A program made the position numbers and the translations under genes. Shown here piece after piece: positions 641-61,250 of a DNA stretch of 64,000 bases. The notes beneath the pieces were generated by a model that worked only from the letters and a program-made list of their open reading frames with translations, did no database searches and was not told the DNA's origin. The first letter of the stretch is position 1. The number at the start of each line of letters is the position of its first letter. The DNA comes from Scyliorhinus canicula (taxonomy: Eukaryota): assembly GCF_902713615.1 (NCBI RefSeq), contig NC_052161.1, positions 86,716,236 through 86,780,235 of the forward strand, given 5' to 3'.

Positions 641-644
641 ACTC

Positions 645-9000: not shown

Positions 9001-9305
9001 CACTCCCGGGCATGTTATTCTTTTTATAAACCACCCCTTACCCCTCAATTACATTCTAGTCTGTAACTCACTCCGGGTATCTGTTATTCTATATATAACC
9101 CACCCTGAACCCCTCCATTAGATTCCAGTCTGTAACTCACTCCCGGGTATCTGTTATTCTATATATAACCCACCCTGAACCCCTCCATTAGATTCCAGTC
9201 TGTAACTCACTCCCATGTATCTGTTATTCTCTATATAAACCCCCCCCGAATCACTCGATTAGATTCCAGTCTGAACTCACTCCCGGGTATCTGTTATTCC
9301 ATATA
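6025..9305. repeat. 70-bp satellite, blocks 2-3 (6025-6256 and 7148-9305), interrupted by the hAT MITE
   Basis: Same 70-bp unit, with phase continuous across the insertions. Confidence 0.95.
6257..7147. mobile_element. Non-autonomous hAT (Charlie-like) DNA transposon
   Basis: 13-bp TIRs CAGTGTTCTTCAA / TTGAAGAACACTG, 8-bp TSD ttccagat/ttgcagat, GC-rich subterminal GGGTCGCG repeats (6920-7075), no transposase. Confidence 0.85.
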
Positions 9306-24709: not shown

Positions 24710-27700
24710 TCTGTAACCTCCTCCAGCCCCTACACCCCTCCCTATCTCTGTAACCTCCTCCAGCCCCTACACCCCTCCCTATCTCTGTAACCTCCTCCAG
24801 CCCTTCACTCCTCCCTATCTCTGTAACCACCTCCAGCCCTACACCCCTCCCTATCTCTGTAACCTCCTCCAGCCCCAACACCCCTCCTTATCTCTGTAAC
24901 CTCCTCCAGCCCCTGCATCCCTCCCTATCTCTGTAACCTCCTCCAGCTCCAAGACCCTCCCTATCTCTGTAACCTCCTCCAGCCCCTACACCCCTCCCTA
25001 TCTCTGTAACCTCCTCCAGCCCCTACACCCCTCCCTATCTCTGTAACCTCCTCCAGCCCTACACCCCTCCCTATCTCTGTAACCACCTCAAGCCCCAACA
25101 CCACTCCCTATCTCTGTAACCTCCTCCACAACCAACACCCCTCCCTATCTCTGTAACCTCCTCCAGCCCTTCACTCCTCCCTATCTCTGTAACCACCTCC
25201 AGCCCTACACCCCTCCCTATCTCTGTAACCTCCTCCAGCCCCAACACCCCTCCCTATCTCTGTAACCTCCTCCAGCCCCTGCATCCCTCCCTATCTCTGT
25301 AACCTCCTCCAGCTCCAAGACCCTCCCTATCTCTGTAACCTCCTCCAACCCCTGCAACCCTCCCTATCTCTGTAACCTCCTCCAGCCCCTACACCCCTCC
25401 CAATCTCTGTAACCTCCTCCAGCCCCTTCACCCCTCCCTATCTCTGTAACCTCCTCCAGCCTCATGACGCTCCCTATCTCTGTAACCTCCCACAGCCCCA
25501 ACGCCCCTCCCTATCTCTGTATCCTCCTCCAGCCCCTATGACCCTCTCTATCTCTGTAACCTCCTCCAGCCCCTATTACCCTCCCTATCTCTGTAACATC
25601 CTCCAGCCCCAACACCCCTCCCTATCACTGTAACCTCCTCCAGCCCCAACACCCCTCCCTATCTCTGTAACCTCCTCCAGCCCCTACACCCCTCCCTATC
25701 TCTGTAACCTCCTCCAGCCCCTACACCCCTCCCTATCACTGTAATGTCCTCCAGTCCCTACACCCCTCCCTATCTCTGTAACCTCCTCCAGCCACATGAC
25801 GCTCCCTATCTCTGTAACCTCCTACAGCCCCAACGCCCTTCCCTATTTCTGTATCCTCCTCCAGACCCTATGACCCTTCCTATCTCTGTAACCTCCTCCA
25901 GCCCCTATTACCCTCCCTATCTCTGTAACATCCTCCAGCCCCAACACCCCTCCCTATCACTGTAACCTCCTCCAGACCCTACACCCCTTACCTATCTCTG
26001 TAACCTCCTAAAGAACCAACACCCCTCCCTATCTCTGTAACCACCTCCAGCCCCTACACCCCTCCCTATACTGTAACCTCCTCCAGCCCCATGACCCTCC
26101 CTATCTCTGTAACCTCCACCAGCCCCTACAGCCCTCGCTATCACTGTAACCTCCTCCAGCCCCGACACCCCTCCCTATCTCTGTAACCTCCTTCAGCCCT
26201 ACACCCCTCCCTATCTCTGTAACCTCCTCCAGCCCCTACACCCCTCCCTATCTCTGTAACCTCCTCCAGCCCTACACCCCTCCCTATCTCTGTAACCTCC
26301 TCCAGCCCTACACCCCTCCCTATCCCTGTAACCTCCTCCAGCCCTACACCCCTCCCTATCTCTGTAACCTCCTCCAGCCCCATGACCCTCCCTATCTCTG
26401 TAACATCCACCAGCCCCTACACCCCTCCCTATCTCTGTATCCTCCTCCAGCCCCTATGACCCTCTCTATCTCTGTAACCTCCTCCAGCCCCTATTACCCT
26501 CCCTATCTCTGTAACATCCTCCAGCCCCAACACCCCTCCCTATCACTGTAACCTCCTCCAGCCCCTATGACCCTTCCTATCTCTGTAAACTCCTCCAGCC
26601 CCTATTACCCTCCCTATCTCTGTAACATCCTCCAGCCCCAACACCCCTCCCTATCACTGTAACCTCCTCCAGACCCTACACCCCTTACCTATCTCTGTAA
26701 CCTCCTAAAGAACCAACACCCCTCCCTATCTCTGTAACCACCTCCAGCCCCTACACCCCTCCCTATACTGTAACCTCCTCCAGCCCCATGACCCTCCCTA
26801 TCTCTGTAACCTCCACCAGCCCCTACAGCCCTCGCTATCACTGTAACCTCCTCCAGCCCCGACACCCCTCCCTATCTCTGTAACCTCCTTCAGCCCTACA
26901 CCCCTCCCTATCTCTGTAACCTCCTCCAGCCCCTACACCCCTCCCTATCTCTGTAACCTCCTCCAGCCCTACACCCCTCCCTATCTCTGTAACCTCCTCC
27001 AGCCCTACACCCCTCCCTATCACTGTAACCTCCTCCAGCCCTACACCCCTCCCTATCTCTGTAACCTCCTCCAGCCCCATGACCCTCCCTATCTCTGTAA
27101 CATCCACCAGCCCCTACACCTCTCCCGATCTCTGTAACCTCCTCCAGCCCCTACACCCCTCCCTATCTCTGTAACCTCCTCCAGCCCTACACCCCTCCCT
27201 ATCTCTGTAACCTCCTCCAGCCCTACACCCCTCCCTATCACTGTAACCTCCTCCAGCCCTACACCCCTCCCTATCTCTGTAACCTCCTCCAGCCCCATGA
27301 CCCTCCCTATCTCTGTAACATCCTCCAGCCCCAACACCCCTCCCTATCACTGTAACCTCCTCCAGACCCTACACCCCTTACCTATCTCTGTAACCTCCTA
27401 AAGAACCAACACCCCTCCCTATCTCTGTAACCATCTCCAGCCCCTACACCCCTCCCTATACTGTAACCTCCTCCAGCCCCATGACCCTCCCTATCTCTGT
27501 AACCTCCACCAGCCCCTACAGCCCTCGCTATCACTGTAACCTCCTCCAGCCCCGACACCCCTCCCTATCTCTGTAACCTCCTTCAGCCCTACACCCCTCC
27601 CTATCTCTGTAACCTCCTCCAGCCCCTACACCCCTCCCTATCTCTGTAACCTCCTCCAGCCCTACACCCCTCCCTATCTCTGTAACCTCCTCCAGCCCTA

Positions 27701-29480
27701 CACCCCTCCCTATCACTGTAACCTCCTCCAGCCCTACACCCCTCCCTATCTCTGTAACCTCCTCCAGCCCCATGACCCTCCCTATCTCTGTAACATCCAC
27801 CAGCCCCTACACCCCTCCCTATCTCTGTAACCTCCTTCAGCCCCTACACCACTCCCTATCTCTGTAACCTCCTCCAGCCCCTACATCCCTCCCTCTCTCT
27901 GTAACCTCCTCCAGCCCTACACCCCTCCCTATCTCTGTAACCTCCTCCAGCCCTACACCCCTCCCTATCTCTGTAACCTCCTCCAGCCCCGACACCCCTC
28001 CCTACTTCTGTAACCTCTTCCAGCCCCATGACCCTCCCTATCACTGTAACCTCCTCCAGCCCCTACAACCCTCCCTATCTCTGTAACCTCCTCCAGCCCC
28101 ATGACCTTCCCTATCTCTGTAACATCCTCCAGCCCCTACACCCCTCCCTATCTCTGTAAACTCCTCCAGCCCCTACACCCTCCCTATCACTGTGACCTCC
28201 TCCAGCCCCATGACCCTCCCTAACTCTGTAACCTCCTCCAGTCCCTACACCACTCCCTATCTCTGTAACCTCCTCCAGCACCTACACCCCTCCCTCTCTC
28301 TGTAACATCCTCCAGCCCAGACACCCCTCCCTATCTCTGTAACCTCCTCCAGCCCCATGACCCTCCCTATCTCTGTAACCTCCTCCAGCCCCATGACCCT
28401 TCCTGTCTCTGTAACCTCCTCCAGCTCCATCACCCTCCCTATCTCTGTAACCTCCAGCTCCATCACCCTCCCTGCCTCTGTAAACTCCTCCTGCCCCATG
28501 ACCCTCCCTATCTCTGTAACGTGCTCCAGCCCCTACACCCCTCGCTATCTCTGTAATCTCCTCCAGCCCTGACACCCCTCCCTATCTCTGTAACCTCCTC
28601 CAGCTCCATGACCCCCCCTATCTCTGTAACCTCCGCCAGCCCCATGACCCTCCCTATCTCTGTAACCTCCTCCAGCCTCTACACCCTCCCTATCTCTGTA
28701 ACCTCCTCCAGCCCTACACCCCTCCCTATCTCTGTAACCTCCTCCAGCCCCTACACCCCTCCCTATCTCTGTAACCTCCTCCAGCCCCTACACCCTCGCT
28801 ATCACTGTAACCTCCTCCAGCCCCTACACCCCTCCCTATCTCTGTAACCTCCTCCAGCCCCTACACCCTCCCTATCACTGTAACCTCCTCCTGCCCCATG
28901 ACCCTCCCTATCTCTGTAACCTCCTCCAGCCCCATGACCCTCCCTATCTCTGTAACCTCCTCCAGTCCCATGACCCTCCCTATCTCTGTAACCTCCTCCA
29001 GCCCCATGACCCTCCCTATCTCTGTAACCTCCTCCAGCCCCATGACCCTCCCTATCTCTGTAACCTCCTCCAGCCCCATGACCCTCCTTATCACTGTAAC
29101 CTCCTCCAACCCCATGACCCTGCCTTATCTCTGTAACCTCCTCCAGCCCCCCACAAATCCATCCCTATCTCTGTAGCGTACTCCAGCTCCCATAGTGCTT
29201 CACAGCACTGCAACCTCCTCCAGGCCTGAAAACCCTGCCTATCTTTGTAACTCCCTACAGCCCCTTACATCCCTCCCTATCACTATAACGTCCCCCAGCC
29301 CTACACACCTTCCTATCTTTGTTATCTTCTCCATCCCTGCCAACCCTCCCTATCTCTACAGCCTCCTCCATACCCGACAATCCTCCTGATCCTTGTAACA
29401 TTCTTCAGCCCCTACACCCCTTCCTATCCCTGCAACCTCCCCCAGCCCTTTCCTATCTCTGCAACCTCCACCAGCCCCTT
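24710..29480. repeat. 37-bp C-rich satellite with ~695-bp higher-order repeats
   Basis: Unit ctctgtaacctcctccagcccctacacccctccctat. Near-identical ORF blocks at 26141, 26838 and 27531. The array decays toward 29480. Confidence 0.95.
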
Positions 29481-29577
29481 CATCCCTCCCCTGTCTCTGT
29501 ACCCTCTTCCAGCCCTACAACCTTCCCTATTGCTGTCAGTTCCACCACCGACGCACAGTGGCAGTCGTGTGTACCGT

Positions 29578-33489: not shown

Positions 33490-35000
33490 CTGCCTGCTCG
33501 TGTAGCGCGGATGGGCAGGGTAAGGGGGGGATGTGCCACATAGTGGGGATGGGCAGGGTAAGGGGGGATGTGCCATGTAGTGGGGATGGGCCGGGTAAGG
33601 GGGGATGTACCACATAGTGGGGATGGGCAGGGTAAGGGGTGGGTGCCACATAGTGGGGATGGGCCGGGTAACGGGGGGCGTGCCACATAGTGGGGATGGG
33701 CCGGGTAAGGGGGGATGTGTCATATAGTGGGGATGGGCAGGGTAAGGGGGGAATGTGCCACATAGTGGGGATGGGCAGGGTGAGGGGGGGATGCCTCTAT
33801 AGAGGCATACAAAATGATCAGAGGGTTAGATAGGGTGGACAGCGAGAGCCTTCTCCCGCGGATGGAGGTGGCTAGCACGAGGGGACATAGACTTAAATTG
33901 AGGGGTAATAGATAAAGGACAGAGGTCAGAGGTGGGTTTTTTACGCAAAGAGTGGTGAGGCCGTGGAATGCCCTACCTGCAACAGTAGTGAACTCGCCAA
34001 CATTGAGGGCATTTAAAAATTTATTGGATAAGCATATGGATGATAAGGGCATAGTGTAGGTTAGATGGCCTTTAGTATTTTTCCATGTCGGTGCAACATC
34101 GAGGGCCGAAGGGCCTGTACTGCGCTGTATCGTTCTATGTTCTATGTTCTATAGTGGGGATGGGCAGGGTAAGGGGGGATGTGCCACATAGTGGGGATGG
34201 GCCGGGTAAGGGGGGATGTGCCACATAGTGGGGATGGGCCGGGTAAGGGGGGATGTGCCACATAGTGGGGATGGGCCGGGTAAGGGGGGACGTGCCACAT
34301 AGTGGGGATGGGCAGGGTAAGGGGGGGATGTGTCATATAGTGCGGATGGGCAGGGTAAGGGGGGATGTGCCACATAGTGGGGATGGGCCGGGTAAGGGGG
34401 GGCGTGCCACATAGTGGGGATGGGCAGGGTAAGGGGGGACGTGCCACATAGTGGGGATGGGCAGGGTAAGGGGGGGGATGTGCCATGTAGTGGGGATGGG
34501 CCGGGTAAGGGGGGGATGTGTCACATAGTGCGGATGGGCAGGGTAAGGGGGGATGTGCCACATAGTGGGGATGGGCAGGGTAAGGGGGAATGTGCCACAT
34601 AGTGGGGATGGGCCGGGTAAGGGAGGATGTGTCACATAGTGGGGATGGGCCGGGTAAGAGGGCGATGTGCCACATAGTGGGGATGAGCCGGGTAAGGGGG
34701 GGATGTGCCATGTAGTGGGGATGGGCCGGGTAAGGGGGGATGTGCCACATAGTGGGGATGGGCAGGGTAAGGGAAAATGTGCCACATAGTGGGGATGGTC
34801 AGGGTAAGGGAGGACGTGCCACATAGTGGGGATGGGCAGGGTAAGGGGGGATGTGCCATGTAGTGGGGATGGGCAGGGTAAGGGGGGGATGTGCCACATA
34901 GTGGGGATGGGCCGGGTAAGGGGGGGTGTGCCATGTAGTGGGGATGGGCCGGGTAAGGGGGGATGTGCCACATAGTGCGGATGGACAGGGTAAGGGTGTA
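33490..35000. repeat. 37-bp G-rich minisatellite containing a CR1 3' fragment (~33795-34150, +)
   Basis: Unit gggatgggccgggtaaggggggatgtgccacatagtg. The CR1 tail ends in (TTCTATG)n. Confidence 0.9.
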
Positions 35001-35087: not shown

Positions 35088-35316
35088 TTTTTTTCATAAA
35101 TTTAGAGTACCCAATTAAGTTTGAGCAATTAAGGGGCAATTTAGCGTGGCCAATCCACCTGCCCTGCACATCTTTTGGGTTGTGGGGGTGAAACCCACGC
35201 AAACACGGGGAGAATGTGCAAACTCCACATGGACAGTGACCCAGAGCCGGGATTCGAACCTGGGACCTCGGCGCCGTGAGGCTACAGGGCGAACCCACTG
35301 AGCCACCGTGCTGCCC
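35088..35316 (-). mobile_element. tRNA-derived SINE (V-SINE/HE1-like)
   Basis: GGGCAGCACGGTGG head, B box GGTTCGAATCC, A-rich tail, 13-bp TSD CGGCCGCACTCCT at 35075-35087 and 35321-35333. Confidence 0.9.
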
Positions 35317-40937: not shown

Positions 40938-41234
40938 TGAAATTGTTAAACCTTCACCTCCCACACACTATCCATATTGTTCCAGCAACTGGACCCTGTG
41001 AGTAATCGGTTTGCTCCTGAAGGCGTCCCCCAATCCCCCCTCCCATACAACACTCCTTAAAACCAAAACCATTGAATGATTTGTTAGTTGTCCCTCCTGA
41101 GAGAGGCCTGAGACAGCTGAGAGTCAAATTGGCTTTCCCGTTAGCACTCCGATTGGGCACTGCGCTGACTCAAAGATTGGCAAAAACCTGAAATATCTGA
41201 TAGCGCCGGCTCTCTGTCACCAGCTCCAACTCAC

Positions 41235-41360
41235 CGGTTCCCTTTCCCCTGTGAGGACCGGCCTCTCCGTGGCTGATGGGGGCAGTAACGAGGCAACGGC
41301 GGTAGCGGGCGTTCCGTGCTCGTGTAATCATTGCTGTTGCAAAGTGGCTGGTTCGAGAGT
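41235..41360 (-). CDS. CD4: CD4 cytoplasmic exon 2: LSNQPLCNSNDYTSTERPLPPLPRYCPHQPRRGRSSQGKGN
   Basis: Acceptor cccctctcag|, donor CG|gtgagt, phase 2/2. Contains the CxH motif. Confidence 0.85.
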
Positions 41361-41411
41361 CTGAGAGGGGAACATGAAACAAGTTAATAATTTGTTAAGT
41401 AACAACCCTCA

Positions 41412-42830
41412 ACACTGTCCCCATCAAACACTCCCAGGACAGGTACAGCACGGGGTTAGATACAGAGTAAAGCTCCCTCTACACTGTCCCCATCAAACAC
41501 TCCCAGGACAGGTACAGCACCGGGTTAGATACAGAGTAAAGCACCCTCTACACTGTCCCCATCAAACACTCCCAGAACAGGTAGAGCACTTGGTTAGATA
41601 CAGGGTAAAGCTCCCTCTACACTGACCCCATCAAACATTCCCAGGACAGGTAGAGCATGGGGTTAGATACAGAGTAAATCTCCCTCTACACAGTCCCCAT
41701 CAAACACTCCCAGGACAGGTACAGCACGGGGTTAGATACAGAGTAAATCTCCCTCTACACTGTCCCCATCAAACACTCCCAAGACAGGTACAGCACGGGG
41801 TTAGATACAGAGTAAAGCTCCCTCTACACTGTCCCCATCAAACACTCCCAGGACAGGTACAGCACGGGGTTAGATACAAAGTAAAGCTTCCTCTGCACTG
41901 TCCTCATCAAACACATCCCAGGACAGGAACAGCACAGGGTTAGATACAGAGTAAAGCTCCCTCTACACTGTCCCATCAGACACTCCCAGGACAGGTACAG
42001 CACGGGGTTAGATACAGAGTAAAGCTCCCTCTACACTGTCCCCATCAAACACTCCCAGGACAGGTACAACATGGGGTTAGATACAGAGTAAAGCTCCCTC
42101 TACACTGCCCCCATCAAACATTCCCAGGACAGGTACAGCACAGGGTTAGATACAGAGTAAATCTCCCTCTACACTGTCCCCATCAAACACTCCCAGAACA
42201 GGTACAGCACGGGGTTAGATACAGAGTAAAGCTCCCTCTACACTGTCCCCATCAAACACTCCCAGGACAGGTACTGCACGGGGTTAGATACAGAGTAAAG
42301 CTCCCTCTACTCTGTCCCCGTCAAACACTCCCAGGACAGGTACAGCACGGGGTTAGATACAGAGTAAAGCTCCCTCGACACTGTTCCATCAAACACCCCC
42401 AGGACAGCTACAGCACGGGGTTAGATACAGAGTACAGCTCCCTCTACACTGTCCCCATCAAACACTCCCAGGACAGGTACAGCACGGGGTTAGATACAGA
42501 GTAAAGCTCCCCCTACACTGTCCCCATCAAACACTCCCAGGACAGGTACAGCACGGGGTTAGATACAGAGAAAAGCTCCCCCTACACTGTCCCCATCAAA
42601 CACTCCCTGGACAGGTACAGCACGGGGTTAGATACAGAGTAAAGCTCCCTCTACACTGTCCCCATCAAACACTCCCAAGACAGGTACAGCACGGGGTTAG
42701 ATACAGAGTAAAGCTTCCTCTACACTGTCCCCATCAAACACTCCCAGGACAGGTACAGCACGGGGTTAGATACAGAGTAAAGCTCCCTCTATATTGTCCC
42801 CATCAAACACCCCCAGGACAGGTACAGCAT
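41412..42830 (+). repeat. 69-bp satellite block, forward orientation
   Basis: Unit cactgtccccatcaaacactcccaggacaggtacagcacggggttagatacagagtaaagctccctcta. Confidence 0.95.
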
Positions 42831-42907
42831 TTGGAATCAAGTTAAGTGTCTGGTTGGCAGGTTCTGGGTATGGAGGGGTATTTGAGAGATGTTTCAAGGT
42901 AACTCAC

Positions 42908-42960
42908 TGGTGACTGTGCTCCCGGCACAGAGGGTGTCTCAATCTCCTCAATGCTCGTCT
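42908..42960 (-). CDS. CD4: CD4 cytoplasmic exon 1: RRALRRLRHPLCREHSH(Q)
   Basis: Acceptor ttctttcctcacag|, donor CA|gtgagt, phase 0/2. Confidence 0.85.
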
Positions 42961-43335
42961 CTGTGAGGAAAGAACAGACATTCCGAGTTAGCAATGGAGT
43001 AAACATTTTGCAATGATGAGAGATTTAGGATGGAAGAGAGAGAGAGAGACGGAGACCGAGGGGCAGTGAGGCAGAAAAACAGAGAGAGAGAGAGGGGGAG
43101 AGAGAAAGAGAGAAGGGGAGAGAGTGAGAAAGACAGTGGGCGAGAGAGAGGGACAGGGCGAGAGAGAGGGACACAGCGAGAAAGAGAGAGCAAGATAGTG
43201 TGAGAGAAACAGGGAGAGAGAGAGAGAGAGACAGCCATAGAGAAACAGTCAGACAGGCAGCCAGGGAGAGTGAGAGACAATACCAAAGAGACAGAGGGAG
43301 TCACACAGCATGACGGGCAGAGGGAGAACGAGAGC

Positions 43336-43621
43336 TGTGATGATATGCAAAAAGCAAGTTTGTACATAATGTTAAGCATGACCTCCGACCACTAGGTGGC
43401 AGTGTAAACCCACCACATAACCCTGTAGCTGGGGAGTTGGATGTAAGTCGTGTTGGTGGATAGACATATTTTTCAGTAGTTCTACAATAGTTAATTAGTG
43501 TTCGTAGTTTATTATTTTCTTTATCCTAGTTATCTTATCACGCATGTGTTTCATAATAAATTATTTACACTGTATGTTCTGTAGTTCATCATTCACTTTG
43601 GCCTGTCCACAGAACATGACA
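43336..43621 (+). mobile_element. Solo LTR with a consensus CTCF motif
   Basis: TGTGATG...CATGACA termini, TSD agagc/agaac. The start resembles the LTR at 61617. CCACTAGGTGGCAG at 43389-43402. Confidence 0.7.
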
Positions 43622-44184
43622 AGAACGAGAGCCAAAGAGAGAGAGAAAGAAACAGGGGAAAGTGACAGAGAGAGAAAGGGACAGAGAGAAAGAGAGAGAG
43701 AGCGAGAGAGTGCGTCAGCAAGCAACAGAGAACATGACAGAGCGAAAGGGATGAGAGTGAGGGAGAGACAGAGAGAAACTCAGTGAGACAGAGCGACAGA
43801 CAGCAAGAGAGAGAGGAGAGAGAGAGACAGGAGTGGAGAGATTGAGAGTGATATGGAGATGTAGATGGAGAGACAGAGAGGGAGAGACAGAAAGGGGGAG
43901 ACAGAGAGAAAGACTGAGAGAGTGAGAGACAGGGATTTTGAGAGAGGTAGACAGAAACAGTGAGTGTGAGACAGATAGAGAGAGGGAGTGAGAGACAGAG
44001 AGTGAGAGGGAGTGACGGAGAGATGAGAGTGAGGAAGGAGAGATGAGAGAGTGAGACAGCTAGATACAGAGAAAGAGGTTTTGGGAGGCAGTAATAGCTC
44101 TCGCTTGAGGGATGTTAGAATGGATCAGTGAATCAAAGAATGGGCATGGGAGCAATGGCCCAATCCTTGCCCTGGTACCCTTAC

Positions 44185-44312
44185 CCGCCTCCTGGCTCTC
44201 TTTGCCAGGCAGATGCCAATCAGCGTGAAGATGACAATCAGGAGGAGTAAAGAGGCTGATGTCCCGATCATCAGGATTAAATTGTCCTTCCCGAAGATAC
44301 TGACAACCGGCT
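44185..44312 (-). CDS. CD4: CD4 transmembrane exon: (E)PVVSIFGKDNLILMIGTSASLLLLIVIFTLIGICLAKRARRR
   Basis: Acceptor ttcctgttctgtgtag|, donor CGG|gtaagg, phase 1/0. Hydrophobic span, juxtamembrane Cys and basic stop-transfer cluster. Confidence 0.92.
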
Positions 44313-44369
44313 CTACACAGAACAGGAAAACGTCAAATAATTCCCAAAATCAGAGACACACTCGCATCT

Positions 44370-46005
44370 TACACCGTGCTATACCTGTCCTGGGAGTGTT
44401 TGATGGGGACAGTGTAGAGGGAGCTTTACTCTGTATCTAACCCCGTGCTGCACCTGTCCTGGGAGTGTTTGATGGGGACAGTGTAGAGGGAGCTTTACTC
44501 TGTATCTAACCCCGTGCTGTACCTGTCCTGGGAATGTTTGATGGGGACAGTGTAGAGGGACCTTTACTCTGTATCTAACCCTGTGCTGTACCTGTCCTGG
44601 GAGTGTTTGATGGGGATAGTGTAGAGGGAGCTTTACTCTGTATCTAACCCCGTGCTGTACCTGTCCTGGGAGTGTTTCATGGAGACAGTGTAGAGGGAGC
44701 TTTACTCTGTATCTAACCCCGTGCTGCACCTGTCCTGGGAGTGTTTGATGGGGACAGTGTAGAGGTAGCTTTAGTCTGTATCTAACCCCGTGCTGTACCT
44801 GTCCTGGGAGTGTTTGATGGGGAGAGTGTGGAGGGAGCTTTACTCTGTATCCAACCCCGTGCTGTACCTGTCCTGGGAGTGTTTGATGGGGACAGTGAAG
44901 AGGGAGCTTTTCTCTGTATCTAATCCTGTGCTGTACCTGTCCTGGGAGTGTTTGATGGGGACAGTGTAGAGGGAGCTTTACTCTGTATCTAACCCTGTGC
45001 TTTACCTGTCCTGGGAGTGTTTGATGGCGACAGTGTAGTGGGAGCTTTACTCTATATCTAACCCCGTGCTGTGCCTGTCCTGGGAGTGTTTGATGGGGAC
45101 AATGCAGAAGGAGCTTTACCCTGTATCTAACCCATACTGTACCTGTCCTGGGAGTGTTTGATGGGGACAGTGTAGAGGGAGCTTTACTCTGTATCTAACC
45201 CCGTGCTGTACCTGTCCTGTGAGTGTTTGATGGGGACAATGTAGAGGGAGCTTTCCTCTGTATCTAACCCCGTGCTGTACCTGTCCTGGAAGTGTTTGAT
45301 GGGGACAGTGCAGAGGGAGCTTTACTCTGTATCTAACCCCATGCTGTACCTGTCCTGGGAGTGTGTGATGGTGATAGTGTGGAGGCAGCTTTACTCTGTA
45401 TCTAACCCCGTGCTGTACCTGTCCTGGGAATCTTTGATGGGGACAGTGCAGAGGGTTCTTTACTCTGTATCTAATCCCGTGCTGTTCCTGTCCTGGGAGT
45501 GTTTGATGGGGACAGTGTAGAGGGAGCTTTACTCTGTATCTAACCCCGTGCTGTACTTGTCCTGTGAGTGTTTGATGGGGACAGTGTAGAGGGAGCTTTA
45601 CTCTGTATCTAACCCCGTGCTGTACCTGTCCTGGGAGTGTTTGATGGGGACAGTGCGGAGGGAGCTTTACTCTGTATCTAACCCCGTGCTGTACCTGTCC
45701 TGGGAGTGTTTGATGGGGGACAGTGTAGAGGGAGCTTTACTCTGTATCTAACCCCGTGCTGTACCTGTCCTGGGAGTGTTTGATGGGGACAGTGCAGAGG
45801 GAGCTTTACTCTGTATCTAATCCCGTGCTGTACCTGTCCTGGGAGTGTTTCATGGGGACAGTGTAGAGGGAGCTTTACTCTGTATCTAACCCCGTGCTGT
45901 ACATGTCCTGGGAGTGTTTGATGGGGAAAGTGTAGAGGGAGCTTTACTCTGTATCTAACCCCGTGCTGTACCTGTCCTGGGAGTGTTTCATGGGGACAGT
46001 GCAGA
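44370..46005 (-). repeat. 69-bp satellite block, inverted relative to 41412-42830
   Basis: Reverse complement of the same unit. Confidence 0.95.
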
Positions 46006-46028
46006 TGTAGTTTTGTTCTGTATCTTAC

Positions 46029-46286
46029 CTGTGACATTGAGGGTCAATGTTGCTGCTCCCAATCTGGCGTTGTTTTGAATGATTTCACAGGTCCATACTC
46101 CAGCTTCGTGCTTGGTGACCTTGATGAGGTTGATGGTGAGAGAATCCTTTCCTTGTGCAATCCCCCCTTTACTGGACATGTTGCTGTGTCTCCACTGAAT
46201 CTGGGTGGATGGGGAATGATGGGAGATCAGGCAACTGAGAGAGATGTTCGAACCAATGATGATCATTCCGGGCTCGCTGACACTCA
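46029..46286 (-). CDS. CD4: CD4 Ig domain D4 (C2-type): VSVSEPG..LSC..IQW..AGVWTCEI..LNVT
   Basis: Phase 1/1, ag/gt boundaries, WxC in place of YxC as typical of CD4/LAG-3 D2 and D4. Confidence 0.93.
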
Positions 46287-46731
46287 CTGAGGGAGAGATC
46301 AAGACCAGGGTCAAAAATATAGAAACAGATCTTCACCAAAGTTCCGATACACTATCTGTCTCTCTCTGTATGTCTCCATCTCTGTCTGTCTCACTCTCTC
46401 TCTCTGTCTCACTCTCTCTCTCTCTGTCTCTTTCTATCTCTCTCTCTCTATTTATCTTTCACTTTGTCTCTCTCTCTCTGTCTGTCTCGCTCGGCCTCTC
46501 ATTCTCTTTGCTCTGTTTCTTTCCATCTCTGTCTCTTTCTTTCTTGATCTGTCTATCTCTCTCTCTGTTTCTGTGTGTCTGTGTGTGTGTATGTGTGTCT
46601 CTCTCTCTCCCTTTCTCTCACAATATCTCTCTGTCACTCTCTCTATCACTCTCTCTCTCTATCTTTTTCTGCCTGTGCCTTCTCAAGACCTCCAGACTTC
46701 CCAGATTGTTTCAGTGACGGGTCATCGGTCA

Positions 46732-52845: not shown

Positions 52846-53466
52846 ACACTCTCTGTCTCTCTCTCACACTCTCCGTCTTTCACACTCTCTCTCTCACTCT
52901 CTCCGTCTCTGTCACACTTTCNNNNNNNNNNNNNNNNNNNNNNNNNNNNNNNNNNNNNNNNNNNNNNNNNNNNNNNNNNNNNNNNNNNNNNNNNNNNNNN
53001 NNNNNNNNNNNNNNNNNNNNNNNNNNNNNNNNNNNNNNNNNNNNNNNNNNNNNNNNNNNNNCGTTTCTCTCACACTCTCTCTGTCTCTCTCTCTTCTCTC
53101 TCTCACACTCTCTCCGTCTCTCTCACACTCTCTCTGTCTCTCTCTCTGTCTCTCTCTCTCTCTCACACTCTCTCTCTCTGTCTCTCTCTCTGTCTCTCTC
53201 TCTCTCTTCTCTCTCTCACACTCTCTCCNNNNNNNNNNNNNNNNNNNNNNNNNNNNNNNNNNNNNNNNNNNNNNNNNNNNNNNNNNNNNNNNNNNNNNNN
53301 NNNNNNNNNNNNNNNNNNNNNNNNNNNNNNNNNNNNNNNNNNNNNNNNNNNNNNNNNNNNNNNNNNNNNNNNNNNNNNNNNNNNNNNNNNNNNNNNNNNN
53401 NNNNNNNNNNNNNNTCTCTCGCACTCTCTGTCCCTCTCTTTCCCAGTCCACCCTCCGCAGCCTCAC

Positions 53467-53799
53467 CTTGGATCACGGTGACACTCAGCTTGCGTGAGAT
53501 GTTCCTGTTTCGGAGGCCCAGTTGGCAGATGTAATCTCCCCCGTCTCCCAGCGTGTTGACTGTGAGGACCACAGACATGTTTATCTTATTCAGGAACCTT
53601 GGCGTTCGGACGCGGCTCTCCCAGGAGCTCCGCCACATCCAGCCGTTGGTGCTGACATTCATTGATACCAGCTCCCTGTCTCCTCGCAGCCAGGCCCCTC
53701 GCACGGGCCTGGTGCTGGGGAACTGGTTCAGGGTGCAGGGCAGTTGGGTACTGGAACCCTCCGGGACGCCGATCACACGCTCGACAGGATTGGTGAAGC
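53467..53799 (-). CDS. CD4: CD4 Ig domain D3 (V-type): GFTNPVERVIGVPEGSSTQLPC..GAW..DGGDYICQL..VTVIQ
   Basis: Acceptor tctctccgcag|, donor G|gtgagg, phase 1/1, canonical C-W-DxGxYxC. Confidence 0.93.
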
Positions 53800-54967
53800 C
53801 TGCGGAGAGACGGAGAGAGGGTTAGGGAGAAGATTTCAGTGCTGGTGTCTGTCAGAGAGAAAGAGAGAGTGTGAGGCAGAATCTTGGAGAATGTGTGTGT
53901 GTGTGTGTGTGAGAGTGTGTGTGTGTGTGTGGGTGAGTGTGTGTGTGTGAGAGAGTGTGCACGAGAGACTGTGTGAGAGAGAGAGAGTACACGTGAGAGA
54001 GAGTTTGTTTGAGTGTGTGTCAGAATGTGTATGAGAGAGTGTGTGTGAGCGAGAGCGTTTGTGGGTAAGAGAGTGTGTGAGAAAGATTGTGTGCGTGAGT
54101 GTGTGTGTGTGCGAGAGAGAGTGTGAGAAAGAGTGTGTGAGAATGTGCGAGAGGGCGTATGTGTGTGAGTGTATGAGAGAGAGTGTGCATGANNNNNNNN
54201 NNNNNNNNNNNNNNNNNNNNNNNNNNNNNNNNNNNNNNNNNNNNNNNNNNNNNNNNNNNNNNNNNNNNNNNNNNNNNNNNNNNNNNNNNNNNNNNNNNNN
54301 NNNNNNNNNNNNNNNNNNNNNNNNNNNNNNNNGAGAGTGTGTGCGCGGGTGAGAGTGTGTGCGCGGGTGAGAGTGTGTGTGCAGGTGAGAGAGTGTGTGC
54401 GCGGGTGAGAGTGTGTGCGCGGGTGAGAGTGTGTGCGCGGGTGAGAGTGTGTGTGCGGGTGAGAGAGTGTGCGCGGGTGAGAGTGTGTGCGCAGGTGAGA
54501 GAGTGTGTGCGCGGGTGAGAGTGTGTGCGCGGGTGAGAGAGTGTGTGCGCGGGTGAGAGTGTGTGTGCGGGTGAGAGTGTGTGCGCGGGTGAGAGTGTGT
54601 GCGCGGGTGAGAGTGTGTGCGCGGGTGAGAGTGTGTGTGCGGGTGAGAGAGTGTGTGCGGGTGAGAGAGTGTGTGTGCGGGTGAGAGAGTGTGTGCGCGG
54701 GTGAGAGTGTGTGTGCGGGTGAGAGAGTGTGCGCGGGTGAGAGTGTGTGCGCGGGTGAGAGTGTGTGCGCGGGTGAGAGAGTGTGTGCGCGGGTGAGAGA
54801 GTGTGCGCGGGTGAGAGTGTGTGCGCGGGTGAGAGTGTGTGCGCGGGTGAGAGTGTGTGCGCGAGTGAGAGTGTGTGCGCGGGTGAGAGTATGAGTGTGT
54901 GTGTGTGTGAGTGAGTCTGTGAGTGTGTGAGTGAGTGTGTGAGTGAGTCTGTGTGTGTGAGTGAGTC

Positions 54968-55153
54968 TGAAATGAAAAATTGAAAATCGCTTATTGTCAC
55001 GAGTAGGCTTCAATGAAGTTACTGTGAAAAGCCCCTAGTCGCCACATTCCGGCGTGTGTCCGGGGAGGCTGGTACGGGAATTGAACCGTGCTGCTGGCCT
55101 GCTTGGTCTGCATTAAAAGCCAGCGATTTAGCCTGGTGAGCTAAACCAGCCCC
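54968..55153 (-). mobile_element. tRNA-derived SINE, with a second copy at 56030-56213
   Basis: GGGGCTGGTTTAGC head, GGTTCAATTCC B box, shared 3' tail. Both copies are in the same orientation. Confidence 0.8.
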
Positions 55154-56411
55154 TGTGTGTGTGCTAGTGAGTCTGTGTGCGAGTGAGTCTGTGTGCGAGT
55201 GAGTCTGTGTGCGAGTGAGTCTGTGTGCGAGTGAGTCTGTGTGCGAGTGAGTCTGTGTGCGAGTGAGTCTGTGTGCGAGTGAGTCTGTGTGCGAGTGAGT
55301 CTGTGTGCGAGTGAGTCTGTGTGCGAGTGAGTCTGTGTGCGAGTGAGTCTGTGTGCGAGTGAGTCTGTGTGCGAGTGAGTCTGTGTGCGAGTCTGTGTGT
55401 GTGTGAGAGTCTGTGTGTGTGTGAGAGTCTGTGTGTGTGTGAGAGTCTGTGTGTGTGTGAGAGTCTCTGTGTGTGTGAGAGTCTCTGTGTGTGTGAGAGT
55501 CTCTGTGTGTGTGAGAGTCTGTGTGTGTGTGAGAGTCTGTGTGTGTGAGAGTCTGTGTGTGTGAGAGTCTGTGTGTGTGTGAGAGTCTGTGTGTGTGTGA
55601 GAGTCTCTGTGTGTGTGAGAGTCTCTGTGTNNNNNNNNNNNNNNNNNNNNNNNNNNNNNNNNNNNNNNNNNNNNNNNNNNNNNNNNNNNNNNNNNNNNNN
55701 NNNNNNNNNNNNNNNNNNNNNNNNNNNNNNNNNNNNNNNNNNNNNNNNNNNNNNNNNNNNNNNNNNNNNNNNNNNNNNNNNNNNNNNNNNNNNNNNNNNN
55801 NNNNNNNNNNNNNNNNNNNNNNNNNNNNNNNNNNNNNNNNNNNNNNNNNNNNNNNNNNNNNNNNNNNNNNNNNNNNNNNNNNNNNNGTGAGTCTGTGTGT
55901 GTGTGAGTCTGTGAGTGTGTGTGAGTCTGTGAGTGTCTGTGTGTGAGTCTGTGAGTGTCTGTGTGTGAGTCTGTGAGTGTCTGTGTGTGAGTCTGTGAGT
56001 GTGTATGTGACTGAGTGTGTGCGCGAGTGTAATAATAATAACAATAATAATCGCTTATTGTCACAAGTAGGCTTCAATGAATTTGCTGTGAAAACCCCTA
56101 GTCACCACATTCCAGTGCCTGTTTGGGGAGCCCAGTACGGGAATTGAACCTGCGCTGCTGGTATTGTTCTGCATTGCAAGCCAGATATTTAGCCCATGTG
56201 CTAAACCAGCCCCTGCCAACCAGTGTGTGAGTGAGCATGAGTGATTGTGTGTGTTTGAACGTGTTTAGTGTGTGAGTGAGTGAGAGTGTGTGAGAATGTG
56301 TGTGAGTGTGTATGTGACTGAGTGTGTGTGAGAATGAGTGTGTAAGTGTGAGTGTGAGTCTTTCTCACTGTTTCACATCGTCCAACCCAGACACTGTTCT
56401 GCTGAACCTAC

Positions 56412-56633
56412 CGATCACATCCAGGACGTAGCTGGTGTGTAGCGTCTCCTTGGCGAACTCCACATTACAGGTCCACTTTCCCGCATGGGACAGACTTATT
56501 GCATTGAGCATCACTGTGTTCTTGTCCCTCTGGGTATCTCCAGGACCGTTCCAGCTCACCTTTCCTGCTGGAGCATGGCAGGTCAGCTCTACATTGTCAC
56601 CCTCGAGCGATGGTTTCGAGGAGCTGGAAGTCA
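56412..56633 (-). CDS. CD4: CD4 Ig domain D2 (short C2-type): TSSSSKPSLEGDNVELTC..VSW..AGKWTCNV..VLDVI
   Basis: Acceptor cctcgtacag|, donor G|gtaggt, phase 1/1, WxC motif. Confidence 0.92.
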
Positions 56634-57119
56634 CTGTACGAGGGGAGGGGGTGTGAGGGAGGATGTGGAGACATATGAAAGTCAGGTTAAAGATATGAAT
56701 GGCATCACCCAGCCCCAAACAGCAAGCCCTTTAGCCCCTCTCACCTGTGCTAGCCTCTGTTCAAACCAGAGAAGGAAAAGGGGCAGCACACATATAGGGA
56801 ACACCCACCGCCTGCAAGTTCCCACCTTTGAGTCCCATACACACCATCCCAACTATGAAATATATCTGTACTAAACTGGATCATGGGAATCAGGGGGAAA
56901 CTCTCCGCTGGTTGGAGTCATACCTGGCACAAAAAAAGAAGGTTGGGGTGTTTGGAGCTCCAGGACATCACTGCAGGAATTCCTCAGGGTTGTGTCCGAA
57001 GGCCAAACCATCTTCAGCTGCTCCATCAATGACCTCCCTTCCATTATAAGTTCAGAAGTGGGGATGTTTGTGGATGACTGCAGAATGTTCAGCACCATTT
57101 GCAACTCCTCAGATAATGA

Positions 57120-58479: not shown

Positions 58480-61250
58480 ACCAGCCATACAAATACAGTG
58501 ATGAAGAATTAAGCTTCATTGATTTCCCAGTGATGGGGCTGAGCCGAAAGGACGGCAGAATTGGCAAAAGCTGGAGAGGAAGAATGAAGCAATGACAAAG
58601 ACGTGAGGCGACGAGGATTTAGCCACACCCAAATGGGCTGCCGGGACAAATGCCAGGCTACCCTCTGATAAATGAATGGAGGGACCTCCTAACACAGGAG
58701 CTCCAAGTGCTCAGAGATGTCTCAGAGCGGCACGTGGTGCAGCGGTTAGCACTGCTGCCTCACGGTGCCGAGGACCCGGGTTCCATTCCGGCCCCGGATC
58801 ACTGTCCGTGTGGAGTTTGCACATTCCCCCCATGTCTGTGTGGGTCTCACACCTACAATCCATGGTAGGTGGATGGGCCACGCTAATTGCCCCTTAATTG
58901 GAAAAAAAAATTGGGTACTCTAAATTAAAAAAAAGAGCTGTGTTGAAATTAGAAAAGATGGCGAGGGTGAAGGTGGCCGTAGCAGAGGTGCTGGTCCCCT
59001 TCCATGCGGTGCTGGAAAAGGTGGAGCAGCGACTGGAGACACAGGAGTCGACGATCAGGGAGCTGGAGAAGGCTGCGGCTGACCAGAGTAACCAGATCGC
59101 CTCACTGGAGACAGAGATAGCAAGGTTGGTGGTGACAGAAAGGACGCTGAGGGGGAAGGGGCCTACCAGTGGGTACCAAGAGCAGGAACCCTATGGATTA
59201 CATGGCCCAGATGCTGAGCAAGCTTGTTGGTAAGGGAAAGCTTCACCAAGCCCCCAGAAGTGTCAGAGCCCACAGGTCACTCCGACCAAAGCCGGGGAAC
59301 AGCTACGTCCATCATTGCCAAACTGTACCGGTACCAAGACCGGAAAAGGATCCTAAACTTGGCAAGACACCCGTGGTCCTGGGAGGGACATTCTATCCGT
59401 GTGGACCAGGACATTAGGGCAAACCTGGCCAAGCGGCTGGCAAAATTCAACACAGCCAAGGCGGCCCTATACAAAAGCCAAGTGAGGTTTGGGATGCTGG
59501 GATGCTGGACTCCGCCAAACTCTGGGTGACTTTCCAGGGCAGGGACCACCACCACCACACCGGCAGCAGGGAATACCACTTCACCACACCGGCAGCAGGG
59601 AATACCACCACCACACCGGCAAAAGGGAATACCACTTCACCACACCGGCAGCAGGGAATACCACTTCACCACACCGGCAGCAGGGAATACCACCACCACA
59701 CCGGCAGCAGGGACCACCACCACCACACCGGCAGCAGGGAATACCACTTCACCATACCGGCAGCAGGGAATACCACTTCACCACACCGGCAGCAGGGAAT
59801 ACCACTTCACCACACCGGCAGCAGGGAATACCACTTCACCACACCGGCAGCAGGGAATACCACTTCACCACACCGGCAGCAGGGAATACCACTTCACCAC
59901 ACTGGCAGCAGGGAATACCACCACCACACCGGCAGCAGGGAATACCACCACCACACCGGCAGCAGGGAATACCACTTCACCACACCGGCAGCAGGGAATA
60001 CCACCACCACACCGGCAGCAGGGAATACCACCACCACACCGGCAGCAGGGAATACCACTTCACCACACCGGCAGCAGGGAATACCACTTCACCACACCGG
60101 CAGCAGGGAATACCACCACCACACCGGCAGCAGGGAATACCACTCCACACACCGGCAGCAGGGAATACCACTTCACCACACCGGCAGCAGGGAATACCAC
60201 TTCACCACACCGGCAGCAGGGAATACCACTTCACCACACCGGCAGCAGGGAATACCACCACCATACCGGCAGCAGGGAATACCACTTCACCATACCAGCA
60301 GTAGGGAATACCACTTCACCACACCAGCAGCAGGGAATACCACTTCACCACACCGGCAGCAGGGAATACCACTTCACCACACCGGCAGCAGGGAATACCA
60401 CTTCACCACACCGGGAGAATGGAATACCACTTCACCACACCGGCAGCAGGGAATACCACTTCACCACACCGGCAGCAGGGAATACCACTTCACCACACCG
60501 GCAGCGGGGAATACCACTTCACCGCACCGGCAGCAGGGAATACCACTTCACCGCACCGGCAGCAGGGAATACCACCACCACACCGGCAGCAGGGAATACC
60601 ACTCCACACACCGGCAGCAGGGAATACCACTTCACCACACCGGCAGCAGGGAATACCACCACCATACCGGCAGCAGGGAATACCACTTCACCACACAGGC
60701 AGCAGGGAATACCACTTCACCACACCGGCAGCAGGGAATACCACTTCACCACACCGGCAGCAGGGAATACCACTTCACCACACCAGCAGCAGGGAATACC
60801 ACTTCACCACACCGGCAGCAGGGAATACCACTTCACCACACCGGCAGCAGGGAATACCACTTCACCACACTGGCAGCAGGGAATACCACTTCACCACACT
60901 GGCAGCAGGGAATACCACTTCACCACACCGGCAGAAGCAGACATATTTATGCACAAGCACGAGCTGGGACGACAATGACAGAGGCAACAGCTAACCAACT
61001 CCATACTAGAGGTGGACTGGCAATATTCCTCGGCCCCAACCGTAGAGCTACTGGCGGAGAGGAAAAATTGCTACAAATGGACTTTGACCTGCTCTCCATG
61101 AGGAAAACAGTGAACCAACTCTGCCAGATGTAGGGGACCTTCTACGAACATGGAGACAAAGCCAGCCACCTTCTGGCCCACCAGCTGAGAAAGCAGCCAG
61201 CCACAAGGGAAAGATCTCAGGTTAAATACAGAAGCAGCAGGCAAAGATCA
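58480..61250 (+). mobile_element. Degenerate L1-type LINE (ORF1 coiled-coil and C-terminus, ORF2 remnant), with a SINE at 58727-58934
   Basis: Coiled-coil LEKVEQRLETQESTIRELE, IIAKL.RYQDR..IL, IRVDQD..LAKR..FN, ORF2 YEHGDKASHLLAHQLRKQ at ~61144. Confidence 0.75.
59546..60930. repeat. 29-bp minisatellite (26-bp variants) expanded inside L1 ORF1
   Basis: Unit caccacaccggcagcagggaataccactt. Confidence 0.95.

What the first reader, a model, noticed from the sequence alone, without database searches (positions are those of the whole stretch)
41412..46005. Inverted 69-bp satellite blocks fill the two introns flanking the TM and first cytoplasmic exons
Seen: blocks of ~1.4 kb (41412-42830) and ~1.6 kb (44370-46005) are reverse complements, each ending 24-80 nt from a splice site. 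Established: inverted intronic repeats promote exon skipping, back-splicing and ADAR editing. Seen: joining D4 directly to exon 41235-41360 shifts frame, but that frame (DSRTSHFATA...GKGT-GWAPEDST...) stays open to a TAG at ~35282 in the last exon, so it should escape NMD. Inference: a route to a secreted four-domain CD4 and/or a 181-nt TM circRNA. The pair is also a substrate for genomic inversion.
Basis: partly seen in the sequence, partly recalled or inferred. Interest (0 to 1): 0.75.

Follow-up and report, generated by a model that had tools for sequence, protein, structure and literature searches.

The report
Inverted satellite arrays flank catshark CD4 membrane exon
Two introns of the small-spotted catshark CD4 gene are almost wholly filled by opposite-facing arrays of a common 69-bp satellite that could clamp the membrane-anchor exons into an RNA loop, but every transcript model available shows normal splicing and no soluble or circular form could be tested.

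Summary
Tandem arrays of one 69-bp unit lie at 41406-42829 (20.7 units) and 44366-46029 (24.1 units). They are 92-95% complementary. They fill 92% and 97% of the two introns that flank the TM exon (128 nt) and first cytoplasmic exon (53 nt) of the intact Scyliorhinus canicula CD4 gene, on the minus strand.

New here:
- The unit is a genome-wide satellite, with 23,549 exact 46-nt cores.
- A third, younger array sits in the leader-D1 intron and is also complementary to the D4-TM array.
- The D4 donor GT lies inside the first, degenerate unit of its array.
- The same inverted layout exists in a paralogous CD4 copy, with different unit numbers.
- The two arrays are not mirror copies of each other.

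RefSeq models for both copies, and the cloned S. torazame cDNA, use the canonical exon chain. No reads could be laid, so skipping, back-splicing and editing remain untested.

Most likely these are tolerated satellite insertions, with at most minor splicing by-products. The scan had noted this stretch before only for the CD4 tail motif, not for the arrays.

The parts
44366..46029 (.). Upstream 69-bp satellite array, 24.1 units. It fills 97% of the 1716-nt D4-TM intron. In the pre-mRNA it reads in the consensus orientation (CCCTCTACACTG...). Its first, degenerate unit includes the D4 donor GT.
   Evidence: Units lie 5.4% from the family consensus.
41406..42829 (.). Downstream 69-bp satellite array, 20.7 units. 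It fills 92% of the 1547-nt cyt1-cyt2 intron and is the reverse complement of the upstream array.
   Evidence: Units lie 6.1% from the consensus.
46029..46287 (-). CD4 D4 (C2-type Ig) exon, 259 nt. It ends in phase 1 with donor CAG|GTAAGAT.
   Evidence: Pfam Ig_3/ig. tblastn to S. torazame CD4. Borders.
44185..44312 (-). Transmembrane exon, 128 nt (EPVVSIFGKDNLILMIGTSASLLLLIVIFTLIGICLAKRARRR). It ends in phase 0.
   Evidence: Identical to RefSeq model P0152.
42908..42960 (-). First cytoplasmic exon, 53 nt (RRALRRLRHPLCREHSH).
42961..44184 (-). TM-cyt1 intron, 1224 nt. It is unique sequence plus CT/GA-rich low-complexity runs, with no 69-bp units.
41235..41360 (-). Second cytoplasmic exon, 126 nt, carrying RPLPPLPRYCPH (the CxH LCK-clasp motif of shark CD4).
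   Evidence: Motif as described in PMC10768021.
35442..35472 (-). Coding part of the last exon (RLGPRGQYTA, stop TGA 35444-35442).
35282..35284 (-). TAG that would end the frame-shifted reading if TM and cyt1 were skipped. It lies in the 3'UTR part of the last exon.
53465..53800 (-). CD4 D3 (V-type Ig) exon, given as context. It lies next to masked N runs, which were left untouched.
56410..56640 (-). CD4 D2 exon, given as context.

Best explanation
A dispersed 69-bp satellite of the catshark genome has colonised short introns of the intact CD4 gene at least twice. One older episode gave the two arrays that flank the TM and cyt1 exons. A younger one gave a 0.7-kb array in the leader-D1 intron.

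The arrays were tolerated because they left the core splice signals in place. In one case the array end itself supplies the donor GT. They predate the local duplication that produced CD4 copies B and C, and they still change in unit number.

In the pre-mRNA, the D4-TM array can zip with the cyt1-cyt2 array 1.5 kb downstream into an imperfect duplex of up to about 1.4 kb. That would loop out the 181 nt of TM plus cyt1.

I infer that the upstream intron is usually spliced out before or despite this pairing, so full-length membrane CD4 is the main product. Exon skipping, a TM-cyt1 circle and A-to-I editing would then be minor by-products at most, not a selected switch.

Shown: anatomy, family membership, complementarity, frames, canonical gene models. 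Inferred: duplex formation in vivo and its small effect on splicing.
For: **Genome-wide satellite.**
- There are 23,549 exact 46-nt cores against 0 for the control pattern.
- Arrays occur on many chromosomes at 97% identity.
- All 18 arrays examined share one identical consensus.
- Flanks are unique and the ends fall in variable register.
- Arrays commonly cluster: 5 of 12 sampled loci have two or more within 10 kb.

**Origin of the CD4 arrays.**
- The two TM-flanking arrays are 5.4% and 6.1% from the consensus.
- Adjacent units are no more alike than distant ones.
- Units of one array are no closer to the other array than to unrelated loci, so they are not mirror copies.
- The third array in intron 1 is 1.8% from the consensus and starts 7 nt after the donor GT.

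**Paralogous copies.**
- Copy B has the same inverted layout with 25.8 and 32.7 units, and copy C has 12.1 units.
- A and B flanks differ by 1-2%, and orthologous units by 0-1 nt.

**Splice signals.** They are intact, with GT..AG borders and branch-point and pyrimidine tracts in the 45-53-nt unique flanks.

**Canonical splicing.**
- Shown by RefSeq models for copies A and B and by the S. torazame cDNA.
- D4 and TM exon words are held by the same runs, which are probably RNA.

**Duplex prediction.** -824 kcal/mol with 396 of 420 nt paired. A single array has no unusual self-structure (z = 0.67).
Against: - No reads or contigs were laid, so minor or tissue-specific isoforms cannot be excluded. 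Contig sets and gene models report the dominant form only.
- Three arrays of one satellite inside one gene, two of them starting within 0-7 nt of a donor GT, is more than a uniform scatter would give.
- The shifted frame staying open for 105 codons has roughly a 1-2% chance, by my own estimate from base composition.
- Long flanking complements are strong promoters of back-splicing and skipping in other animals (PMC8330042).
- The RNA nature of the runs is a guess made by the tool.
Confidence: 0.62

Rival explanations
1. The inverted arrays are a working splicing device. Their duplex makes T cells produce a meaningful amount of TM-less secreted CD4 with a 105-residue new tail, and/or a 181-nt TM-cyt1 circular RNA, possibly tuned by ADAR editing.
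For: - Complementarity and predicted duplex.
- Correct exon arithmetic, and a stop in the last exon.
- The arrays have coexisted with an intact gene long enough to diverge 5-6% from their consensus.
- Complementary flanking introns promote both skipping and back-splicing in tested systems (PMC8330042).
Against: - No junction evidence of any kind.
- The gene models for both copies are canonical.
- No TM-less protein of 289-919 aa is in the collection.
- The new tail runs through 3'UTR sequence and has no known relative.
- Unit number is free to vary between copies (24 or 26 or 12 upstream; 21 or 33 downstream), as expected for neutral DNA.
- The same satellite sits at thousands of other loci.
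Confidence: 0.12
2. The pair arose as one event: a foldback-type element, or a local inverted duplication of a single array, rather than separate satellite seedings.
For: - The two arrays have the same degree of decay (5.4% and 6.1%) and lie only 1.5 kb apart.
- Another locus (L013) also shows an inverted pair.
Against: - The segment between the arrays holds two ancestral CD4 exons in correct order and orientation.
- Units of one array are no closer to the other array than to unrelated arrays, and show no mirrored order.
- The array ends fall in different registers: 1 and 45 against 49 and 63.
Confidence: 0.08
3. The inverted arrangement is an assembly error in which one block is mis-oriented or misplaced.
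For: Tandem arrays and recent duplicates are typical places for assembly mistakes. The locus carries N runs elsewhere.
Against: - There are no N inside 41000-46500.
- Each array is bounded on both sides by unique sequence that includes correctly oriented exons.
- Copy B, 300 kb away and 1-2% diverged, has the same architecture with different unit counts. Copy C shares the upstream junctions.
Confidence: 0.03

Closest known systems
Inverted Alu pairs and other reverse-complementary matches in introns flanking circularised or skipped exons. Mammalian IRAlu-driven circRNAs are cited from general knowledge; C. elegans zip-2 from PMC8330042.
   Same: - Reverse-complementary sequence lies in the two introns that bound a small set of exons.
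- The predicted duplex brings the back-splice sites and the skipping sites together.
- A competing third complementary copy exists in another intron.
   Different: - The arms are 1.4-1.7-kb tandem satellite arrays that fill the introns almost entirely, not single SINEs or 13-40-nt matches.
- No circular or skipped RNA has been observed here.
Dispersed euchromatic satellite or minisatellite families found as many short arrays. Examples are the Tribolium and oyster satDNA-like repeats (PMC4675708, PMC7492417), seen as titles and abstracts only.
   Same: - One consensus shared by arrays on many chromosomes.
- Arrays of 0.7-4.7 kb with unique flanks.
- Local clustering and variable unit number.
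   Different: - No carrier transposon was found in the flanks.
- Array ends show only a loose preference for registers 47-49 and 57-66.
- No published description of this 69-bp catshark unit was found.
Shark CD4 as defined by Takizawa et al. 2023 (PMC10768021).
   Same: - Same exon chain, including the extra cytoplasmic exon and the CxH motif.
- An intact gene, with two CD4 pseudogene fragments lying downstream in reverse orientation.
   Different: - The paper does not describe intron content.
- It reports no splice variants: 'splice', 'soluble' and 'variant' have 0 occurrences in the text.

Membership tests
Flanking-intron complementary pair that drives back-splicing or exon skipping | Reverse-complementary sequences in the introns on both sides of the exon(s) | tested here: met
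   Arms up to 509 nt at 92-95% complementarity, in the D4-TM and cyt1-cyt2 introns.
Flanking-intron complementary pair that drives back-splicing or exon skipping | Cross-intron pairing more stable than pairing within each intron | tested here: met
   Cofold of 420-nt arms gives -824 kcal/mol with 396 intermolecular bp, against -99 and -156 for the arms alone. A single array folds no better than shuffles. Caveat: a third complementary array in intron 1 could compete.
Flanking-intron complementary pair that drives back-splicing or exon skipping | Back-splice junction (cyt1 donor to TM acceptor) or skipped junction (D4 to cyt2) present in RNA | not testable with these tools
Indirectly, only canonical models and no TM-less protein were found.
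ADAR-edited long intronic dsRNA | Clustered A-to-G mismatches between RNA reads and genome in the paired arms | not testable with these tools
   No reads were laid, and contigs cannot show this. Only the long-dsRNA precondition is predicted.
Dispersed satellite / minisatellite family | Head-to-tail units of constant length sharing one consensus at many unlinked loci | tested here: met
   69-nt spacing and an identical consensus in 18 arrays. 23,549 exact cores genome-wide. Hits on many contigs.
Dispersed satellite / minisatellite family | Arrays not embedded in a common larger mobile element | tested here: met
   400-nt flanks of 20 array ends share nothing beyond local duplicates and unrelated common repeats. 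The sample is small and biased towards young arrays.
Foldback-type transposon | One mobile unit whose two long inverted termini are built of the same tandem repeats, with an element-specific middle | tested here: not met
   The middle carries host CD4 exons TM and cyt1 in the proper order. The arms are not mirror copies.
CD4 (as opposed to LAG-3) | Cytoplasmic tail encoded by several exons and carrying Cx(C/H) | tested here: met
   Exons cyt1, cyt2 and last, with the CPH motif in cyt2. Criterion from PMC10768021.
CD4 (as opposed to LAG-3) | Orthology to an experimentally cloned shark CD4 | tested here: met
   tblastn of S. torazame CD4 (P0151 = BEJ26263.1) hits D2, D3, D4, TM, cyt1, cyt2 and the last exon in the window, and leader plus D1 18-20 kb upstream.
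CD4 (as opposed to LAG-3) | [quoted passage not shown] | not tested
The layout of copies A, B and C fits the paper's description of the intact gene and its pseudogene fragments.

The most novel reading that the evidence does not exclude
A genome-wide satellite has repeatedly settled at the 5' splice sites of short CD4 introns in catsharks. One array now supplies the donor GT of the D4 exon. The resulting dsRNA clamp of about 1.4 kb around the membrane-anchor exons makes T cells release a TM-less CD4 and/or a TM-exon circular RNA. That would be a lineage-specific, satellite-built switch for a soluble co-receptor in the oldest vertebrates that have CD4.
Probability: 0.1. Interest if true: 0.65.

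Novelty: new member of a known kind. Interest (0 to 1): 0.35.

Why it matters
Shark CD4 was recognised only recently, and nothing is known about its isoforms.

If the clamp acts, it would be a natural case of satellite DNA, rather than SINEs, rewiring the splicing of a key immune receptor. It would also offer a ready minigene model, because three paralogous copies carry 12 to 33 units.

If it does not act, the locus shows how far vertebrate introns tolerate near-complete replacement by mutually complementary satellite. It also shows why such genes fragment in short-read assemblies and get misnamed in annotation.

Tried and rejected
**1. Reads.** Nothing was laid.
- One search used copy C (L002:2100-7999), which has only 12 units and brings D4, TM and the last exon within 6 kb.
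- met the cap.
Scripts cut them out. Script 58 read L002 whole, but only as a local tblastn subject.

**2. Orthologous introns.** These gave no DNA.
- Heterodontus francisci CD4 (P0022) spans only 7.5 kb, but the file was too large to serve.
- S. torazame CD4 has a gene range of 174 kb, which was too long.
- P0012 and P0082 are not on record.

**4. Skipped isoform in protein collections.** None was found among proteins of 289-919 aa or in the 90% cluster. Shorter fragments were not searched.

**5. Known RNA families.** None in 41000-46500.

**6. Origins rejected.** The downstream array as a mirror copy of the upstream one, and a carrier transposon in the flanks.

**7. Literature.** No description of this 69-bp catshark unit was found.

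**8. Strand bias.** The two older arrays show a sense-strand A>G excess (26 against 11). It was not seen in the few changes of the intron-1 array. I treat it as unexplained small-number noise.
Full report
**What is there**

Tandem Repeats Finder reports two arrays of a 69-bp unit. One lies at 41406-42829 (20.7 copies, 93% matches). The other lies at 44366-46029 (24.1 copies, 92%). Neither has indels, and their consensus units are reverse complements. The repeat finder lists 157 inverted pairs between them, with arms up to 509 nt at 92-95% complementarity. The block contains no N.

**The gene**

The minus strand carries CD4 of the small-spotted catshark. Three RefSeq proteins of Scyliorhinus canicula map to a contig of 144,966,053 bp, which is the length of this window's contig C16.

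The cloned S. torazame CD4 (P0151 = BEJ26263.1) aligns to the following exons in the window:

| Exon | Window position |
|---|---|
| D2 | 56410-56640 |
| D3 | 53465-53800 |
| D4 | 46029-46287 |
| TM | 44185-44312 |
| cyt1 | 42908-42960 |
| cyt2 | 41235-41360 |
| last | from 35472 |

Leader and D1 lie 18-20 kb beyond the window end. The multi-exon tail with RPLPPLPRYCPH fits the published definition of shark CD4 (PMC10768021).

**Exon borders and frames**

All four introns in this part are GT..AG.

- The D4-TM intron is 1716 nt, of which 1664 nt (97%) is array.
- The cyt1-cyt2 intron is 1547 nt, of which 1424 nt (92%) is array.
- Unique flanks of 53 nt and 45 nt keep the branch-point and pyrimidine tracts of the TM and cyt2 acceptors. 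A 78-nt flank follows the cyt1 donor.

At the D4 donor there is no spacer. The intron starts GTAAGATACAGAACAAAACT. That matches the satellite GTTAGATACAGAGTAAAGCT at 16 of 20 positions and continues in register into the array. The donor GT therefore lies inside the first, degenerate unit.

Skipping TM plus cyt1 removes 181 nt. It gives a 105-residue new tail that ends at TAG 35284-35282 in the last exon. Skipping TM alone, or cyt1 alone, hits an early stop in cyt2.

**What the repeat is**

The unit is a genome-wide satellite.

- An exact 46-nt core occurs 23,549 times in the 4.22-Gb assembly. The control pattern occurs 0 times.
- Five-unit queries hit many chromosomes at 97% identity.
- Eighteen arrays from 13 loci and CD4 copies share exactly the same consensus.
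- Their flanks are unrelated, and their ends fall in variable registers with loose preferences.
- Arrays cluster. Five of 12 other loci have two or more within 10 kb, and one of those pairs is inverted.
- On contig 1 the listed hits are confined to a few regions.
- Rfam finds nothing in the block, and no paper on this unit was found.

**History**

Units of the two TM-flanking arrays lie 5.4% and 6.1% from the consensus. Most of the other sampled arrays lie at 1-2%, although that sample favours young arrays. Neighbouring units are no more alike than distant ones. Units of one CD4 array are no closer to the other than to unrelated loci. The two arrays are therefore old, of similar age, and not mirror copies of each other.

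A third array of 9-10 units, 1.8% from the consensus, sits in the leader-D1 intron (C16:86799220-86799942). It starts 7 nt after the donor GT and has the same orientation as the downstream array. In about 140 kb of locus sequence read, no 69-bp array lies outside these CD4 introns and their paralogous copies.

**Paralogous copies**

The D4-to-cyt2 segment exists twice more on C16.

- **Copy B** lies 300 kb away on the other strand. It is collinear and has the same inverted layout, with 25.8 and 32.7 units.
- **Copy C** keeps D4, a 12.1-unit array and TM. It then lacks window 43340-38729, so cyt1, the downstream array and cyt2 are missing.

A and B differ by 1-2% in unique sequence. Orthologous units differ by 0-1 nt. 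Whole blocks of units have been gained or lost. The arrays therefore predate the duplication and remain length-unstable.

The inter-array segment has not inverted in either copy. The shared architecture argues against a mis-oriented assembly. This layout fits the published picture of one intact gene with pseudogene fragments downstream in reverse orientation.

**RNA-level evidence**

No reads could be laid. The indirect evidence is as follows.

- RefSeq XP_038629127.1 matches this window's exons exactly. XP_038677195.1 matches copy B, including its TM variant. Both use D4-TM-cyt1-cyt2-last.
- Copy C's model joins TM to the last exon.
- No TM-less relative of 289-919 aa was found.
- Nine runs hold most sampled words of both the D4 and the TM exon: X1, X2, X4, X7, X11, X12, X13, X14 and X16.
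- Sibling runs of the same studies hold none. That pattern suggests tissue-specific RNA, but the run type is the tool's guess.

**Mechanism**

For 420-nt arms, the predicted intermolecular duplex has 396 bp and -824 kcal/mol. The arms alone fold at -99 and -156 kcal/mol. One array by itself folds no better than shuffles.

Such flanking complements promote both back-splicing and skipping in tested systems (PMC8330042). The intron-1 array offers an alternative partner that would loop out D1-D4.

By direct reading, the units offer only weak cryptic splice sites: CAG|GTACAG and GGG|GTTAGA on one strand, and CTAAC...GAG| on the other.

**Verdict**

I judge it most likely (0.62) that these are tolerated satellite insertions with at most minor splicing by-products. 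A working soluble-CD4 or circRNA device remains possible (about 0.1) and is directly testable.

Noticed in passing
L019:8985-9707 (C16:86799220-86799942, about 19 kb beyond the window end): A third array of the same 69-bp satellite (9-10 units, 1.8% from consensus) lies in the leader-D1 intron of the same CD4 gene. It starts 7 nt after the donor GT. It has the same orientation as the cyt1-cyt2 array, so it is also complementary to the D4-TM array.
   Followed up: partly
window 46005-46029: The D4 donor (G|GTAAGAT) lies inside the first, degenerate satellite unit (satellite GGTTAGAT). Either the array end supplied the splice site, or it integrated by microhomology at the old one.
   Followed up: partly
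L002 (C16:86541500-86549500): CD4 copy C lacks cyt1, the downstream array and cyt2 (a deletion of window 43340-38729). RefSeq models it as a 292-aa protein with TM spliced to the last exon, giving a tail-less CD4-like product. The model is named 'MAM domain-containing GPI anchor protein 1-like'.
   Followed up: partly
RefSeq proteins P0152, P0153, P0151: The CD4 models are misnamed. The window copy is called 'endothelial cell-selective adhesion molecule-like' and is N-terminally truncated. Copy B is called 'uncharacterized LOC119979271'. S. torazame CD4 is called 'lymphocyte activation gene 3 protein-like'.
   Followed up: partly
20 arrays at 12 other loci (L003-L014) and the CD4 copies: Array ends are not random in register. 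Several arrays start at consensus positions 47-49, and 10 of the 20 end at 57-66. This hints at a defined element end or a preferred integration homology. No common flank was found.
   Followed up: partly
window 41406-42829 and 44366-46029: Relative to the consensus, both older arrays show more A>G than T>C changes on the transcribed sense strand (13 against 7, and 13 against 4). The counts are small, and the intron-1 array does not repeat the pattern.
   Followed up: partly
G000 contig C1 (listing): Exact satellite cores listed on contig 1 fall only near 1.07 Mb, 158-165 Mb and 303-305 Mb. This suggests strong regional clustering of the satellite.
   Followed up: no
window 642-2179, 7162-9306, 24710-29530, 34151-34996, 59539-60934: Other long minisatellite arrays crowd the locus: units of 50, 70, 37, 37 and 29 bp, the largest with 132 copies. 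CT/GA-rich low complexity fills much of the TM-cyt1 intron (43035-44077).
   Followed up: no
They were left alone afterwards.
   Followed up: no
L015-L016 against window 53800-56410: The D2-D3 intron is 13.7 kb in copy B but only 2.6 kb in the window copy, which carries N runs there. Either copy B gained insertions, or the window copy is incomplete at the masked places.
   Followed up: no
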